A DNA stretch of 61,934 nucleotides, filler included, from Platydemus manokwari (lineage: Eukaryota): the NCBI GenBank assembly GCA_037951405.1. It is 6 parts of 6 records of this genome, joined end to end, with 100 filler letters (N's around TTAATTAATTAA, not from the genome) between each part and the next. Parts side by side here need not be neighbours in the genome. Positions count along the whole stretch, not along the records: positions 30,996 to 40,851 come from JBBMOY011196543.1; 5 more parts are not named here. The stretch is one strand, 5' to 3'. This document shows, piece after piece, positions 30,996 to 40,851 of this stretch. The notes below the pieces were generated by a model. It saw only the letters and a program-made list of their open reading frames with translations, had not been told where the DNA came from and ran no database searches. The position numbers were made by a program, and so were the translations under genes. Each line of letters starts with the position of its first letter. The first letter of the stretch is position 1.

Positions 30996-31032
<37 letters not shown>

Positions 31033-31066
31033 CATCATCATCATCATTATTATTATTACTATTATT
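30996..31066. repeat. (ATT)n/(ATC)n microsatellite
   Basis: Direct reading. Confidence 0.9.
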
Positions 31067-34000
31067 CCCTTGTAATTATTATAATTATTATTATGATTTT
31101 TTAATCTAAAAGCAAAGATTAATACTTTAAACTTTCATTTAATCAACTGGAACTGTTTTTGGATGTGGTCGAGCTGGCTGAATCGATACAATTTTTCCAA
31201 ATCCCCAGTAAACTTAATTCTTAAATTTAGTTTTCTTTGAGAAGTTTTTAAGATCGAGAAATTTTAATTTTTCCAGTCTATTTATATTATTTGAGAAGTG
31301 AAAATTCTACATAAGAAATTTAAAATATTTTTATTTTACCATTTTGGTTTAAAAATTATTTTTGTTTTTCATCAAAAATTCATTCTATTTATTTTATGAT
31401 TTTTAGAAAATTCACTTTTTATTTTAATGAATATTTCGTGATCAATTTATTATCCCTTGGAGTCATATTTAAAAGTTAATGAATATTTTGTAGAACAAAC
31501 CAGGTATACCCAACGTTATTATTAACAAAGTAAATGCGAAGTGTTATTCACGTTTCATAGGAAAACGGTTGTTGTACAAAATTTTATCTTGTAATGTGTA
31601 TTCTCAAATTATTGACGTTCGTTGATTATACATTATACTTTAGATATTTCTTATTTAATACGTTAATGGTTAATGTAGCAATGATCAGGAAAATTTGCAA
31701 ATAGAATAATTGTTATCAGTATATTAAAGCTCCTTACATGATAAATAGTTAAAATATTCATTTTACGTTGTATATGGTTAATCTCTTTAATTACATTAAC
31801 GCTTTTTCATCTTGACCACTTCAATTCTTGTGATATCCTATCAGTACTTCAAAGTGCGGTATTTTGGAGTTTTTGGTCATTTGACTTAATTTTATACAAT
31901 GAGCTGGGTTTCACTTTTATCTAGATTTTTTCAATATAATCGCCTAAAGTGACCCAATAGAATATCCTTAATTTGATTGGCATTTCTTATAGCGAGAAAT
32001 AATTCCCATTGTTTATTTCGATTTGTCTATTATTTATTTATTGGGGCTTTATTGAGACTATATTTATTAAACTGAAGTGGTCACTGGTTTTTTTTATCCA
32101 ATGGAAATTTCTGTAAATAATATGATGGCTATCATAATGCTTCTGTTATCAAAAATAATTTATCACAAAGTCGGAATTTTAAATCTGTCACTATAATTAT
32201 ATGTATCTTTTTTCTATATTCCTTTAATAATAACATCAATTGTCAAAGGCGTCTATTATATTTAAAATAATAATTTCAGATGAGTTCGAATAACCAATTT
32301 TACTGAAAAATCATCCATTATCAATATATACAATAAAATATTGATTACAGGAAAATTTTATCGTTACAATAAAATTTGAAAGCAAGCTAATAGTTATATT
32401 GGGGTTCCGGAAAAATAACATTTAACATTTTTGAATGCAATTGATTTGATGTATAAAAGTAGCATTTTTTATCGATTTATTGTAAAATATAAACTCTGAT
32501 GTGCAATTCTTATCTTTTTGTTTCTATAATTAATCGAAGCAGAATTTTAAATGAATTCTAATTCTTAAAAATAGTTTGATATTTTTGGTCATTAATAATA
32601 ATGTTAATAGTAACAACAATTCAATCGAAATTGTAAATAGTTAAAAATCTGATAAAATCTTTTATCATAATTAAATGTGATAATAATTTAGTTTAATTTA
32701 GGATAATTTAGGATAAAATTTTTAGTTAATTTCGAATAAAACTGGTAAAATAGAATTAATTAAATTGAAAATAAGTTAATAATTTTCATTTTAAACTTAG
32801 TGACTAATAATTATCAATTTTTAAACCCCTATTTTTCCCGAAATTACCCGTATATAAAAATAATCGTTAACAATAAAACCCGCATGGCAACCAAGTCAGA
32901 GAAATAATCCAATTGAATTGTGAAAACTCGTCACAATTAAATTGAAAAGTAGACCCGCTTATTTTATTCAATCCGAATAAATTCCCATTGTTCGTGAAAA
33001 CATATTTAAGGCAGTAGAACATCATATGCCTTTGCCCTTCTTGAAGAAACTCCTAGGATAGTGCGTTGTGTAAACCGAAAATCGAAGATAATTTTGCCGT
33101 CGAAGACTCCAATTTCTCTGAAGCCGTACGATCGAGTTTATGCCATATAGTAATATTGGAAGAGTCTGTCCTATAAGTTAAGATCACGTAAGAATAATTC
33201 CTGTAAAATACATATTGCCTCTATATATCTCGTATATTCTTCCTATTTATCTAGCCGAGCTCGGGAAAATCTCTGAAGAAAAGAACACTGACCCAATAGC
33301 ACGAAGGGTAACTGTTGGTCTAACATCTGCGTCCATTGAATTGCACATCCATTTTAATCCAGTGGGTAAGTGTATAAAAGTAGTTGTATAAAATCATTGT
33401 ATATCGTAGAAATTTATATTCATTGTTAATAATTTTATACAGTACAATAACAATAAACATTCATAACCCAAATATCGAGTTGATTTTTTGAATTGCCAGT
33501 TGGCTTAAGGTATCAACAATTCACAATATATATACATCATTATCATTCATCACCGATTTTGGAAATAATTTTGACAAATAAATTAATAAGAGAGACTGAT
33601 AATAAGACTGAGGAGAAAACAATAAAGGCAAGAGACTGTAAAAATATAATAATATCGATATCTACGCCGATCCACTTATCATCATATAAGTTGCGATCGT
33701 CGAGGCGAAAGAACATCAATTCATTTAAGGTCGAAATACTACCTGAAACGGACTCAGGGTACTGATAAGACGTAGTTATCGATCAATCAAAAAGAATAAT
33801 AATAAAGAATAAAAGAGAGTGACCCAAAAACGTATCAGTTACTTAAATATCTGATGTAAGAATTTTGAAACGAATTAAATTTTTTAAATATTTAATTCAG
33901 ATTTTGTATAAAATAATATTAATATTTTTAAATAATTGTAGCTAAATATAATTTTGTAATGTGGACTTCCGATTTGTTTTCAATTCATGTTTTATGGCGA

Positions 34001-36629
34001 CCACGCATCTGGATTTGATTCTAAAAACATCTTTGACTGAAATGTATAGAAGAGAAGTAGAAAGATATAGAAAATATATTGAGAATGTGTACAGAAAATA
34101 TAGAGAAGATACCTGTATGATATAAAGAAGAACATAGAAGATATAGAAAAGATATAAGGTAGTTATAAGAAATATAGGTATTAATATGGATACTTATTCA
34201 GATCATTCGATAGATAGATAAGTGTAATCATAAAGAAAGTAAAGGAACTTGAAAAAGGTAAGGATTTATTAAATAGTAAATGTAATGGAGAGCTTGAATC
34301 ACTACGGAAATGGAGGATTGATAAATAATAATATAAATTGTTGCAATTTATTAATCTGTTGGGAGTTGCTGGTGAATTTAAAATCACATAATAATCAAGA
34401 TGAAAACTAACAGATAACGATTACGAATATATATATATGCTTTCTTCAGGAAAATGCATTCACTCCATCCCTATTTTAAATACATGAGATTTTAGATTTA
34501 CACAACTCGAAACATGATATTTAGTCATGCTTATAACCTCGGAACGGCTATCTTGGCGTGATATTTGATGGTTATTGTTATTATTTTAATCTATTTCATT
34601 AACTCTGCATTAAAAAATTGTAAAAACTTAATAATTAATTCACCACAATATAATCATTTTTTATATTCATTTTTGATAGCTCATCGCTACCAGATCCATT
34701 AACAACACAAAAAACAATTTTTCATTCTTGGCATGCGCAGATGACATTCCAGAAAGAAAATCCTATTGAAATATATAAAATCCTTGAAAATAATTATTTC
34801 TAAATTTACACGTTAAAATAAATAAATATTCATTACTATTAACATCTGTGATTACCTATTAAAATAACCATGATCAATAAATTATATCAAAAAAAATTTG
34901 TCTCATAGATGCGCGGATTTAATGACAGAGAATTAAGACACAATTACTAGCAGTAATGATCAAGTGCTTCCTTAATTTCATACATTAAACGAGAAGATTG
35001 TTCTTCATCGATGATCCAGAATCTCTTTACGCCCAGTTTCATAATTCGAAAACCGAGTCACGTAAGCTTTAATAACACCCTAAAATCATATTCTAAAATC
35101 TATAATATTTCTACTTACCTCAATCTTAAAATGGCTTTGCCCTTATATTACGAAAGGGTTCTATAAACCATGATCTTATTTGAAATAGATAAGATTAAAA
35201 TCAACTGTTATCTCAAGTTGCATAATTGTGTGGATTTTTGTATTTGTTTTTTGTACAATTTTTGAGATTACTGTTTAATATATTTTTGATAATAGCGTGA
35301 GATGAAAAGAATTACAATATGGTATATTACACCTGGAGCCTTAATAAGAACTCCTTGAGATTGATTAAAACGACAGAATCAATAGTGTTAAAGAATAATA
35401 GCAAACGACATAAGTCCGAACGTAGCATTAATGTGTCCTATTTTTGATAATCTACTGATATTTAAAATTGAGGTTTTATTACTTGAATTTTGATTTTATT
35501 TAGATGTATTTCTAATTGGAGTCGTTTCTACCATAAAGTGTTTTTGTCAATTTTGGGTTACCTTGACGATAATTTTTTTGATTTTGCTCCTTGGAAACCT
35601 TGCTTTCGCAATTTAAGCATATACATGCTTACACAACCATACAGACATAGTAAACCTGTCAATCAAAGAAGATTTAGAAGATTTTAATTCGAAAAATTGA
35701 CATAACTACACAACTACTCACATGATGATGAATTTTACCAAATAGACGTCATGAATTCTACAGGCAATTTACCAGTTAAAGAAAAAACAATTGATAAATA
35801 AAATATTTATTATTAATGGACAAATTTTAACGATTTAATCCAAAATTTCAGTACACTTAATTTCCGGGCTGTAGTTACAGCAATTCCCAGAAGCTTTATG
35901 ATCTGTAAACCCGTTCGTAACTATTGGGGAAATATCTTTCACAAGTAGTTTAACTGTACAGATGGTTGAGAACATGCGTTTTTAAATTATTAATTATGTA
36001 ATGTGTATCCTGGAGATTTTTCTTTGCCTAAAATATTCAGATTACTTAAATTCTCTTCCACTTCAGCAATTGCCATAGACGAATTCCCTATTTTTACCAC
36101 AAAATGATGCTCCTCTCTTCTAGAAGGTAATTGTGATATTATTGTGTACTTCGTGTAATTATTAGCAATTATCATGTCGTTATTGTATTTGTAACTGTGT
36201 CATTAAAACGTGCATGCCATAAATGTGACTACTGTATTACATAGACATCAATGAGGCACTCGTAGAAATTCTCTGATTATTTATTTAATGCAGTGCATGC
36301 ATGTTTTACACGTGTGAATTAGTGATTGGGCAAATATATTAAAACCACAAGCGATTTTGAAACCAACTGTCCATTTTTAGTCTTTCTTATTTTTAATCGA
36401 TATTCAAACACATGAAAAATGATAACCCAACACAATGAACCTCATCAAACACTTAGTAAAACAAAAACCAAGGCTAAATAACAATTTAATAATAATATTA
36501 AATATTGACACAAGTATCAAATAGATAAACATAACTTCCAAATATTGGTTTGTGTAAGAAAAACAAGGGAAAAATAGCACAAAAAATGTTTACATTCGAC
36601 ATATATTCATTAACAAAAATAATTCTTCC

Positions 36630-38502
36630 TCAGTTCAACATTTCCAATTGTTCGTTGAGCTCAGTGTACAATCTCTGCATACGTAAATTTAAAGCAAATA
36701 GAGGTAGAATCTCTTTAAGTAGGACACGCTTGGAATAACGCTAAAAAACAAATCATCCATATTAACACGGTTGAAATTTAATATATAATGCGGAAATACA
36801 CAACAAATTGAACTCGTAAAATTTTTGAAAATATTATTTTTCGATGAAAAAAATCAATAAATCAATAAAAATGAGACTAATAAGATAATTATTAATGGTT
36901 TGAAAAAAATCGATAAATTTAAGGTAAAAATGTTTGTATAATTCAATCACAACAAAACTCTGTAAAATTTTCCAAAATTATTTTTAAATTTTTAAAGATT
37001 TTTTTAAAAAATCTAAGCTGATAATTTAGACAAATCTTCTGATTGTTATTATCGATTAATTATCATTTATGAATTATCATTATCACTGAAACAATTTTGG
37101 TAATTATGTGCTGATAAAACTATTGATAAAATACCAACAAGAAGTCGTTACTATTCATCCAATATCGGATGGGTCTACTCTTCACTCAAACTAATTCCGC
37201 TTTCCGGTCTGACTACATTTTGGTCATTATCACCACATCCATGATAATTATTACTTTATTAATTATTAACAATGATTATAATCATTATTGCTTTTATCAT
37301 TCCCAAATTAGTTATTCTTTTAAATACATTATAATAACGATATAATTTATTATTTCATTAATTATTGTTACCGTTGCTATGGATATTGTTATAGTTATGA
37401 TATTTGTCCTTATTAATTATTATTATCATTTTGTTGTTTCTCTCTAGATTTAACCATTATTTAAATAAATTTCGACATCGATTCATAACCAATAGGATCA
37501 GTTTACTATAAAAATCAATAATCATAATAATAAATTATTATTAATATTAATTTTATTATTATTCTAGTTGTTGAGACATGTGCTAATATGAGATCAAAAT
37601 GCAATCACAACAAGTCCAAATGGTCCAATGAAATGTGATTTAAATATCAACATGATTCTTATTGGTTATATTCCATCTAATTATTGATTTTACTTATCAA
37701 ATCAAAAATATTTTAAAATATTTGTCGGCCCAATATCGAAATGAAACAATTCACCAATACATGCCATCTCCTTTTCAATAAAACACTGAGCACCTTTCGA
37801 GAATGATTTCATATATTTTATAGGCTTGCCAAAAAATTAAAATAATTATTATGTAATATATTATAATTTTTATTTTAAAAAAATAAGAGAAAATAATAAT
37901 AAATAATAAAAATATCTCACCAAAATAAAAGGTTCCCAATTTGTTTTCGTGGATGTGTGGACTGGACCGAGGAAATTCTGACAAATATCTCGGACGCGGG
38001 TTTCTTTATCTAGAAAATAAATCACCATAGCATTAAATCACTGAAATCATAAAATTGATTATTGATATTACCTGCTTCAATGAGATGTCTCATCCATAAT
38101 AATAGCCAATATTTATATTCTTCAGGTGAATTGAGACTTTCTGCGAGTTTAACTTGGATTTCCAACCGATCCAGAATCAATTCCATTTTTGCAGAAGCAC
38201 TTAATCCTTTATTTGTGGTACTTAAAATATAACGATAACAGAATCTCCGTAAAAATATCATCAGCCTCACTCGTCATTAATAGAATCACTGGTTTGCATC
38301 AAAGCTAATGGTTTACACATCATTGTTTTGCACGACAATTTCGATACCGACCAAAAATCTGATTTATTAGAATTGTTGAATACTTCTTGCCAAATGGAAA
38401 ATTGCTTATTATAATAAAACGAAGATCCACTCTCGAAAGTAAGACTGATATTTCCTTCATTGGAAATCGATATATTTTTTACAAGGGTTTTATCTCCATC
38501 AT
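36630..38502 (-). CDS. HIRA: Histone chaperone HIRA, C-terminal exons: 38502-38271, 38220-38072, 38009-37921, 36740-36630
   Basis: LDRLEIQVKLAESLNSPEEYKYWLLLWMRHLIEA.KETRVRDICQNFLGPVH..WEPFIL.YSKRVLLKEILPLFALNLRMQRLYTELNEQL matches the HIRA C-terminus (LENQVAAALTLQSSHEYRHWLL..RLREICKDLLGPVH..RKRELLKELLPVIGQNLRFQRLFTE). All junctions are GT-AG and in frame; stop TGA at 36632-36630. Confidence 0.9.
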
Positions 38503-38720
38503 CTGTCATTGAAAGGATTACAATTATTATAGCGATCAACAATAATATCAAATGATAAAATATTTAAAAATAAAAATTATATCCAGCAAATAATGAAAAT
38601 AAAAAATATTGCGATTATAATAAATTTATAAATATTTTCAAAATTAAACGTAACATTAACATGTAGCAAAATATGTCGTTTTGATGAATAAATACAAAAT
38701 CCTTGTGATATTATTATCAC

Positions 38721-38740
38721 GTTTCTAAGCAACGATTGGA
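38721..38740. promoter_or_regulatory. X-box-like site next to a CCAAT box, between the mib stop codon and the HIRA exon
   Basis: GTTTCTAAGCAAC followed by GATTGG (CCAATC on the minus strand). Confidence 0.3.
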
Positions 38741-38833
38741 TAGAAAATCTAAATAAATAAAATCAAATAAGAAATAATGACAATCTATTTTAGAAAAATG
38801 AAAATATTAGTAAAATGGAAAATAATATCTTGG

Positions 38834-40851
38834 TCATTGAAAAAGTCTGATTTTCTGATCAATGCTGATTCGACAAATATGGCATTCAAACAAATTATTA
38901 GCACAAACATCGCATGAAACATGACCACAACCAAATGTGACATTGATGGGGTGATCTCTGCAGATAACACAAGTTTTCTGAAAATTATATCATGATAACT
39001 GAGATAGCATAATATTGTTTCTACCTCATCTCGCATCTGTTGAATTATTTCCTTCAATTTCTCGACTTCTTCATTGCCATTTCTTTGAACCTCAACAACG
39101 CATTGTGAAGATTCCTCAGACTGAAGGTTTGAAAAGATAATAATATTCTTTATTATATAAATTTGAAAATATATTTTCTAATAACCAGCCTATATTTAGT
39201 ATTCCAGTAGGTGTTAATTCAGAGATAATCAAGCGGTCAACCACGAGATATCTAGATGAGATGCCATCATATTGAAATTAGACGACTTCAATTTTCAATT
39301 ATTAGTTTAACTAAAGATAAAAATAATATTTGATTAATAATTTGTGTTGGTTTGGTTCTGTAATCACGAAGTGTGAAGCATTTCTATTCACTTATTGTGC
39401 TGATGAAAGAAAGGGATGAAAGCACAAATGTAAAGAAGAATTTACAATTCAATAAATTATCCTTGACTCCTCAAAAAGTTATAACATTTTCATCAAAATC
39501 TTTTGAACTGGTTCGTATTGTATACCAGTTGTATAAGTTCGATTTAGCTGGTGGTTCTATGTTGTTTATCAATAATTATCGTCGCTCTTAATATCAATTT
39601 TAATGGTCTTTCATTATATTATTCTATTTTAGGAAAGTTACAAGAAAGCATGAAATACATTTGCTTTTATACATTCGTAAATGTCGCGGTAACAATGATA
39701 GAAGTGGTGTACATTTTATAAAAATTACAATTAATTCAAATATTACCGAAGATGAAATGATATTACTGATGAAATCATGCTACTGATGAAATGATATTAC
39801 TGATGAAATGATGTTACTGATGAAATGATGTTACTGATGAAATCATGCTACTGATGAAATGATATTAATGATGAATGATATTACTGATAAAATGATGTTA
39901 CTGATAAAATGATGTTACTGATGAAATCATGTTACTGATAAAATGATGTTACTGATGAAATTCTGTATCAAATCGAAAAATTATCAATGAATCACATTAA
40001 ATGTGAAGTTATTAAATTAGATTTCGAATGGATTCGTGTGAATAATTTAAAGTTTTGTATTTGATTGTTGATTCTCGTTCTTACATAATATTTCACAATA
40101 TTTAGATAATTATTATCGATAATAATACTGGGAGAAAAGAAGTGAAAAATAAGCAATGAAGATGAAAAGATGAGAGACAGCAAAGCAACGAGCTGTAATG
40201 GAGCGAAATACTGATTGTTAACCTCTGATTTTTCTTAAAATCCTGCAATGTTTAAATATTGACATAATTTATTTATTATGATCACAGATAGTTTCCATAT
40301 AAATATTCTTCATTATCATTTCCATTTCCTGACAATAAGGGGCTCATATACAGATAGTTAATTATTTCACCTAAACATTATTTATAATTATTTTATCAAC
40401 CAACCCCACACCATGGAATTGATTTAGTTTTATTGTTTGACATAATCATTCAACATTGTTGCTAAATATAACCACTCACTAAACTAATCGTCATGCCGGT
40501 TTGTATCGACAATACTTTTGCTTTCAACAATTCGTCATCACAAAATGACATTGGAGTTTCGCCTTGATTATTTTTTATATCCAATCTAGCTCCCTTTTCA
40601 ATCAAATACATCACGATATCGTCAAAATTCTCCAATTGTTTCTCCGGATCCTCTTTTGATTTGAATAAATCACCTAAACCAAGCAACTTGCTAATTTTCT
40701 AAAATCATTATTATCGAATAACAAGTTCAAAAATAAAATTCACTTTCAATCTGTTCTTCTTGAATAATCGCATCCCTTCGTGGAGAGGTGTATCGCCATC
40801 TTCGTCTCTTAAATTTAAATCGGCATTATTCTCAACCAAGACTTTCACACA
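38834..40851 (-). CDS. mib: Mind bomb-like E3 ubiquitin ligase, 3' part (ankyrin repeats, coiled coil, C-terminal RING): exons 40851-40744, 40698-40480, 39120-39025, 38977-38834
   Basis: VKVLVENNADLNLRDEDGDTPLHEGMR and YLIEKGARLDIKNNQGETPMSFCDD match the last MIB ankyrin repeats. EKLKEIIQQMRDEKTCVICRDHPINVTFGCGHVSCDVCANNLFECHICRISIDQKIRLF matches MIB RING3 ([44 protein letters not shown]). Phase-0 junctions; 5' end lost at the linker. Confidence 0.85.
39751..39960. repeat. 17-bp minisatellite, ~12 copies (GATGAAATGATRTTACT), in a mib intron
   Basis: Direct reading; head-to-tail units with no spacers. Confidence 0.95.

What the first reader, a model, noticed from the sequence alone, without database searches (positions are those of the whole stretch)
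36630..40851. A Mind bomb-like ligase sits where the rest of HIRA should be: same-strand nested gene or split HIRA
Within one gap-free contig, the mib-like stop codon (38834) is followed 331 bp later on the same strand by an internal phase-1 HIRA exon (38502). The four HIRA exons are intact but encode only the last ~190 aa. HIRA normally has a large WD40, B-domain and Hira-domain part upstream, and none of it is visible before the mib exons. Possible explanations: a whole multi-exon E3 ligase nested in the sense orientation within a HIRA intron; HIRA split into two genes; chimeric mib-HIRA splicing; or a partial duplication or misassembly. I see no canonical AATAAA on the minus strand in the gap, so how mib terminates without truncating HIRA is unclear.
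Basis: partly seen in the sequence, partly recalled or inferred. Interest (0 to 1): 0.7.

Follow-up and report, generated by a model that had tools for sequence, protein, structure and literature searches.

The report
Ligase gene tail abutting HIRA's tail
On one short AT-rich contig, the end of a Mind bomb-like ubiquitin ligase gene sits 331 bases upstream, on the same strand, of the last four exons of the histone chaperone gene HIRA; most likely the ligase gene lies inside a HIRA intron, which is an ordinary arrangement, but the contig is too short to prove it.

Summary
On the minus strand, four exons encode the last ankyrin repeats and a MIB1 RING3-like finger (stop 38836-38834). After a 331-nt gap (20% GC), four phase-consistent exons (38502-36630) encode about the last 193 residues of HIRA.

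- Three HIRA exons are individually significant against Pfam Hira or human HIRA.
- The first HIRA exon starts at position 69 of the 220-position Hira profile, so it is an internal piece of the domain.
- No earlier HIRA exon is detectable among the visible mib introns.
- In-frame mib-HIRA chimeras from the visible donors are excluded: all donors are phase 0, the acceptor is phase 1, and a stop follows after 7 codons.
- The missing AATAAA is not significant, since 30% of shuffles also have none.

The piece is a 9.9-kb contig that ends in a microsatellite and in an ankyrin-repeat exon, so the upstream HIRA exons simply cannot be seen. No RNA run, no relatives and no read laying were available.

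Best reading (about 0.5): a same-strand nested gene in a HIRA intron. The rivals stay open: partial duplicate, chimeric contig, or an independent C-terminal HIRA gene starting at ATG 38509. Interest is low.

The parts
40744..40851 (-). mib-like exon A (ankyrin repeat), cut by the edge of the piece; donor GT at 40743-40742, phase 0
   Evidence: Open frame from 40848. Pfam Ank_4 E 1.9e-4 and Ank_5 E 4.3e-4.
40480..40698 (-). mib-like exon B: last ankyrin repeat and following linker; 45-nt intron upstream
   Evidence: Weak Pfam ankyrin hits. Matches the MIB1 ankyrin region 8v0e chain 345-377, E 4.4e-10.
39751..39961 (.). 17-nt tandem repeat, 12.5 copies, inside the 1.35-kb mib intron B-C
   Evidence: TRF score 324; repeat family D1.
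39025..39120 (-). mib-like exon C: charged linker (probably coiled coil) before the RING; phase 0 at both ends
   Evidence: Open frame, acceptor ...ccttcag and donor gtagaa. Its position corresponds to the linker before RING3 of MIB1; this is an inference from my own knowledge of MIB1.
38834..38977 (-). mib-like last exon D: C-terminal RING finger, plus stop codon at 38836-38834
   Evidence: zf-C3HC4_3 E 6.7e-9, 35.9 bits against a cut-off of 27. Best solved-structure hit is RING3 of MIB1, E 2.1e-7, aligned to the C-terminus.
38503..38833 (-). 331-nt gap between the mib stop and the HIRA acceptor. It must hold the mib 3' UTR and its poly(A) site. In the nested reading it is also the 3' end of a HIRA intron.
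   Evidence: GC is 20% and the sense strand is 49% T. There is no AATAAA or ATTAAA. TATAAA lies at 38630, AATAGA at 38789, and AATAAT at 38715 and 38528. An in-frame ATG lies at 38509, and there is no ATG between 38655 and 38510.
38271..38502 (-). HIRA exon E1, internal: starts in phase 1, ends in phase 2
   Evidence: Pfam Hira PF07569 E 2.3e-6, 27.8 bits (cut-off 25), profile positions 69-136 of 220.
38072..38220 (-). HIRA exon E2
   Evidence: Pfam Hira E 3.4e-6, profile positions 170-206. Matches human HIRA 5yje chain 270-305.
37921..38009 (-). HIRA exon E3 (29 full codons), ends in phase 0
   Evidence: Open frame, with canonical AG and GT and a phase that links E2 to E4. It has no database hit of its own.
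36630..36740 (-). HIRA last exon E4, plus stop codon at 36632-36630
   Evidence: Matches human HIRA 5yje chain 340-372, E 2.6e-6. AATATA lies at 36607 and ATTAAA at 36490, downstream of the stop.

Best explanation
Two separate genes lie head to tail on the minus strand of an AT-rich, short-intron animal-type genome. The upstream gene encodes a Mind bomb-like ankyrin/RING E3 ligase and ends at 38834. The four exons that follow are the true 3' end of a HIRA gene. The first of them (38502-38271) is an internal, cis-spliced exon. Its upstream partner exons (the rest of the Hira domain, the B domain and the WD40 propeller) would lie beyond the contig edge, upstream of the mib-like gene. On this reading the mib-like gene, or at least its last four exons, sits in sense orientation inside a HIRA intron of more than 2.35 kb. 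HIRA transcription would have to read through the weak, non-canonical mib poly(A) site, and the whole guest gene would be spliced out with the intron. What is shown: the exon structures, their homologies and their phases. What is inferred: that upstream HIRA exons exist and that there are two independent transcripts.
For: - E1 starts at profile position 69 of the 220-position Hira domain, exactly at a canonical AG with a pyrimidine-rich run in front. The frame needs one base from an upstream exon.
- In human HIRA the trimerising beta domain (W799/D800), the ASF1-binding B domain and the UBN1-binding WD40 domain all lie N-terminal of the part encoded here (PMC6078998; mapping). A 193-residue product would therefore lack almost everything HIRA needs.
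- All four HIRA exons are intact and their phases are consistent.
- All visible mib exons are intact and end with a proper MIB1 RING3-like finger and a stop. Both units therefore look like live genes.
- No HIRA-like open segment exists in 38503-40851, so the missing exons must lie further upstream.
- The contig ends in a (TTA)n microsatellite and in an ankyrin-repeat exon. These are typical assembly breaks, so failing to see the upstream exons is expected.
- From my own knowledge: same-strand nested genes are a documented minority class in animal genomes.
Against: - No HIRA exon is seen upstream of the mib exons, so the defining feature of nesting (host exons on both sides of the guest) is not shown.
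- No related genome was available to test whether the arrangement is conserved.
- An in-frame ATG at 38509, a TATAAA at 38630 and an ATG-free stretch at 38655-38510 would also allow an independent start.
Confidence: 0.5

Rival explanations
1. Partial duplication: a copy of the 3' end of HIRA (its last four exons) landed downstream of the mib-like gene. A complete HIRA lies elsewhere, and this fragment is a young pseudogene or an untranscribed relic.
For: Only the last ~193 codons are present, starting in the middle of the domain. Nothing HIRA-like lies upstream within the piece. The 5.6 kb downstream holds no recognisable gene.
Against: All four exons keep open frames, canonical splice sites and consistent phases. 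The copy break would have to fall inside the intron, leaving E1 and its acceptor whole. There is no sign of decay.
Confidence: 0.15
2. Chimeric contig: the assembler joined two unrelated loci inside the 20%-GC, low-complexity gap 38503-38833.
For: The assembly is fragmentary: the piece is 9.9 kb and both of its ends fall in repeats. The gap is very AT-rich. The only public run holds 84% of the sampled words, not all of them, and it may be the source of the assembly.
Against: No repeat longer than 19 nt in the gap matches anything else in 37013-40851. Both genes lie on the same strand with sensible spacing. Short-read assemblers usually break at repeats rather than join across them.
Confidence: 0.12
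3. Split HIRA or an internal promoter: the C-terminal ~195 residues are expressed on their own, from a start in the gap and the in-frame ATG at 38509. This would be either a separate gene (with the N-terminal half encoded elsewhere) or a short isoform.
For: ATG 38509 is in frame and lies 5 nt upstream of the putative acceptor. No other ATG occurs in the 146 nt before it, and a TATAAA sits at 38630. From my own knowledge, fungi carry HIRA functions on two proteins (Hir1 and Hir2).
Against: - The product would begin at position ~69 of the Hira domain and would probably lack the trimerisation residues (an inference from the alignments).
- The ATG context (T at -3) is poor.
- In 80% AT sequence, an ATG within 21 open codons, a TATAAA and a 146-nt ATG-free run are each expected by chance at roughly 0.1-0.3 or more.
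- Two upstream ATGs (38662 and 38656) open short ORFs.
Confidence: 0.1
4. Chimeric mib-HIRA transcript: mib exons are spliced to the acceptor at 38502.
For: The two units share a strand and are close together, and no canonical poly(A) hexamer lies between them.
Against: The visible mib donors (40743, 40479, 39024) are all phase 0, while the acceptor needs phase 1. Read in phase 0, the exon stops after 7 codons (MMEIKPL*). Exon D carries its own stop. The lack of AATAAA is not significant.
Confidence: 0.03

Closest known systems
HIRA (histone cell cycle regulator; human HIRA, structure 5YJE of residues 644-1017)
   Same: E1 and E2 match the Pfam Hira domain. E2 and E4 align to the alpha-helical C-terminal part of human HIRA, up to its end.
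   Different: Only about the last 193 residues are present on the piece. The WD40 propeller, the B domain and the first ~68 profile positions of the Hira domain are not seen.
Mind bomb E3 ligases (MIB1/MIB2)
   Same: The last ankyrin repeat, a charged linker and a C-terminal RING whose best solved relative is RING3 of MIB1 appear in the same order and reach the C-terminus.
   Different: Only one RING is visible. RING1 and RING2 of MIB1 are not found between the last ankyrin repeat and the final RING. The N-terminal MIB/HERC2, ZZ and REP domains lie beyond the edge, if they exist.
Same-strand intron-nested genes of animals (my own knowledge; one example of an intron-nested gene is Israa in Zmiz1, PMC8361231, listed)
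   Same: A complete-looking multi-exon gene ends a few hundred bases before an internal exon of another gene on the same strand.
   Different: Host exons upstream of the guest have not been seen, so nesting is inferred rather than shown. I found no report of a mib gene nested in HIRA.

Membership tests
HIRA | Hira domain (PF07569) in the C-terminal half | tested here: met
   E1 scores 27.8 bits and E2 27.3 bits, both above the 25-bit cut-off. They cover profile positions 69-136 and 170-206 of 220. Positions 1-68 are absent from the piece.
HIRA | Conserved C-terminal helical tail | tested here: met
   E4 aligns to human HIRA 5yje chain 340-372, E 2.6e-6. E2 aligns to chain 270-305.
HIRA | N-terminal WD40 propeller (binds UBN1) and B domain (binds ASF1a) | not testable with these tools
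   Nothing of the kind is found in minus-strand open segments of 38503-40851. The piece ends at 40851. Domain roles are taken from PMC6078998.
Mind bomb (MIB1/MIB2) | Ankyrin-repeat block followed by C-terminal RING finger(s) of the zf-C3HC4_3 type | tested here: met
   Exons A and B give ankyrin hits, and exon D gives zf-C3HC4_3 at E 6.7e-9. The best solved-structure hit is MIB1 RING3. The last ankyrin repeat matches MIB1 8v0e.
Mind bomb (MIB1/MIB2) | Two or three RING fingers after the ankyrin block | tested here: not met
   Only one RING is found. No RING-like open segment lies in the 1.35-kb intron between exons B and C.
Mind bomb (MIB1/MIB2) | N-terminal MIB/HERC2 domains, ZZ finger and REP/SH3 repeats | not testable with these tools
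   These would lie upstream of 40851, outside the piece.
Same-strand intron-nested gene pair | Host-gene exons on both sides of the guest gene | tested here: inconclusive
   Host exons are seen only downstream (38502-36630). Upstream of the guest the contig ends.
Same-strand intron-nested gene pair | Separate transcripts, with host splicing across the guest | not testable with these tools

The most novel reading that the evidence does not exclude
In this lineage HIRA has been broken up. The C-terminal ~195 residues (the end of the Hira domain plus the CABIN1-side helical tail) would be expressed as a gene of their own from a promoter in the 331-nt gap, using ATG 38509. The WD40/B-domain half would be encoded elsewhere. 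This would be an animal counterpart to the two-protein Hir1/Hir2 arrangement of yeast.
Probability: 0.08. Interest if true: 0.6.

Novelty: new member of a known kind. Interest (0 to 1): 0.2.

Why it matters
If the nested reading holds, this is one more example of a sense-strand guest gene in a host intron. It raises a mild question: how does the host polymerase pass the guest's poly(A) site? Here the site looks weak and non-canonical, which fits. That is of routine annotation interest only.

The practical value is a warning. Gene predictors given this contig would call a truncated HIRA or a false mib-HIRA fusion.

The finding would only become interesting if HIRA proved to be truly split or to have an independently expressed C-terminal fragment. 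That would bear on how the trimeric HIRA scaffold can be divided.

Tried and rejected
- **Relatives.**
  - The search of protein representatives with E1 returned only low-complexity, repeat-type proteins and no HIRA.
  - The search for homologous proteins with the E1 ORF and with mib exon B found nothing. Its length window also excludes full-length HIRA or MIB.
  - Two metagenome scans, with E1 and with E2, found nothing.
- **Literature.** There is no report linking HIRA and mind bomb by position.
- **Hidden HIRA or RING exons in the mib introns.** None were found.
- **Poly(A)-signal depletion as a sign of a host intron.** Rejected as not significant.
- **SL trans-splicing or operon reading.** Rejected: a transcript starting at acceptor 38502 opens with an out-of-frame ATG and a 7-codon ORF, and the next in-frame Met is late in E1.
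- **RNA genes.** There are no Rfam or tRNA hits.
- **Joined exon model.** All searches were made exon by exon, by reference.

Full report
**The piece**

Places 30996-40851 are a 9.9-kb stretch with about 26% G+C. It starts in a (TTA)n microsatellite and ends inside an ankyrin-repeat exon. Both are typical break points of a fragmentary assembly. Short introns of 45-62 nt, TTTTCAG-type acceptors and the gene content point to an AT-rich invertebrate-type genome; that is an inference.

**Observation**

Reading the minus strand gives two exon series. Every exon reference translated without a stop.

| Gene | Exon | Places | Notes |
|---|---|---|---|
| mib-like | A | 40848-40744 | cut by the piece edge |
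| mib-like | B | 40698-40480 | |
| mib-like | C | 39120-39025 | |
| mib-like | D | 38977-38837 | stop at 38836-38834 |
| HIRA | E1 | 38502-38271 | acceptor AG 38504-38503, starts in phase 1 |
| HIRA | E2 | 38220-38072 | |
| HIRA | E3 | 38009-37921 | |
| HIRA | E4 | 36740-36633 | stop at 36632-36630 |

- All mib-like junctions are GT..AG and phase 0.
- The gap between the two series, 38833-38503, is exactly 331 nt at 20% GC.
- The HIRA junction codons are open and the phases agree. Together the four exons encode about 193 codons.

The homologies are well beyond chance:
- E1 and E2 each pass the Pfam gathering score for the Hira domain, at profile positions 69-136 and 170-206 of 220.
- E2 and E4 align to human HIRA, 5yje chain 270-305 and 340-372.
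- Exon D is a zf-C3HC4_3 RING. Its best solved relative is RING3 of MIB1, aligned to the very C-terminus.
- Exon B matches the last ankyrin repeat of MIB1.

**What can be excluded or weakened**

1. In-frame mib-HIRA chimeras from the visible exons are impossible. The three visible donors are phase 0 and the acceptor needs phase 1. Read in phase 0, E1 gives MMEIKPL followed by a stop.
2. The same short ORF argues against an SL trans-spliced, operon-type start at 38502.
3. No earlier HIRA exon and no further RING exon is detectable among minus-strand open segments of at least 25 residues in 38503-40851.
4. The absence of AATAAA and ATTAAA in the gap is real but not remarkable. The sense strand is 49% T, and 30% of dinucleotide shuffles also have none. 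Variant hexamers are present: TATAAA at 38630 and AATAGA at 38789.
5. The gap shares no sizeable repeat with the rest of 37013-40851.

**What the HIRA fragment would lack**

In human HIRA the WD40 domain binds UBN1, the B domain binds ASF1a and the C domain binds CABIN1. Activity needs homotrimerisation through the beta-strand part, with W799/D800 as the critical residues (PMC6078998).

E2 aligns from chain position 270 of the 644-1017 construct. E1 adds only about 88 residues before that point. Barring indels, the fragment would then start some 20-25 residues after W799/D800; this is an inference. Together with the Pfam match starting at profile position 69, E1 looks like an internal exon of a larger gene rather than a natural N-terminus.

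**Best reading**

The mib-like gene lies in sense orientation inside a HIRA intron, and the upstream HIRA exons lie beyond the contig edge (confidence about 0.5). The guest's weak poly(A) context would let host transcription pass through it; this is also an inference. Same-strand nesting is a known minority class of gene arrangement in animals (my own knowledge), so this would be ordinary.

**Rivals that remain**

- A partial duplicate of the HIRA 3' end (0.15). Against it: all exons and splice sites are intact.
- A chimeric contig joined in the AT-rich gap (0.12).
- An independently expressed C-terminal HIRA gene or isoform (0.10). It would use the in-frame ATG at 38509, with a TATAAA at 38630 and no ATG in the 146 nt between. 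Each of these features is likely enough by chance in 80% AT sequence.
- Chimeric splicing (0.03).

**Limits**

- No RNA run holds the stretch.
- The exhaustive protein search with E1 gave only low-complexity hits.
- Word searches and metagenome scans found no relatives.
The joined protein was never built for a search or a fold.

**Verdict**

The likely explanation is ordinary, but it is unproven for lack of sequence upstream. Novelty is low and interest is 0.2.

Noticed in passing
window 39751-39961: A 17-nt minisatellite (consensus GATGAAATGATGTTACT on the + strand, 12.5 copies, 88% matches) lies inside the 1.35-kb intron between mib-like exons B and C.
   Followed up: partly
window 30996-31098 and 40744-40851: The piece begins in a (TTA)n microsatellite and ends inside an ankyrin-repeat exon. 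Both ends are repeat-type assembly breaks, so the contig edge says nothing about gene boundaries.
   Followed up: yes
window 30996-36629: The 5.6 kb downstream of the HIRA stop has no Pfam-recognisable coding segment on either strand, no Rfam hit and no tRNA. This holds despite a local G+C rise to 0.34 at 32996-33495.
   Followed up: partly
window 34058-34156: A degenerate purine-rich 11/21-nt tandem repeat (unit TAGAGAAGATA) coincides with a strong local GC skew of +0.34.
   Followed up: no
window 38977-40698: The mib-like tail goes from the last ankyrin repeat straight to a linker and a single RING3-like finger. Counterparts of MIB1 RING1 and RING2 were not found. This may be a one-RING Mind bomb relative.
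   Followed up: partly
window 38503-38833: The gap is strongly T-skewed on the sense strand (T 0.49, A 0.31). It carries 7 AATAAA/ATTAAA hexamers on the antisense strand and none on the sense strand.
   Followed up: partly
They lie in the 1.18-kb HIRA intron between E3 and E4 and overlap an AT-rich 21-nt repeat that was reported earlier. They were not examined further.
   Followed up: no
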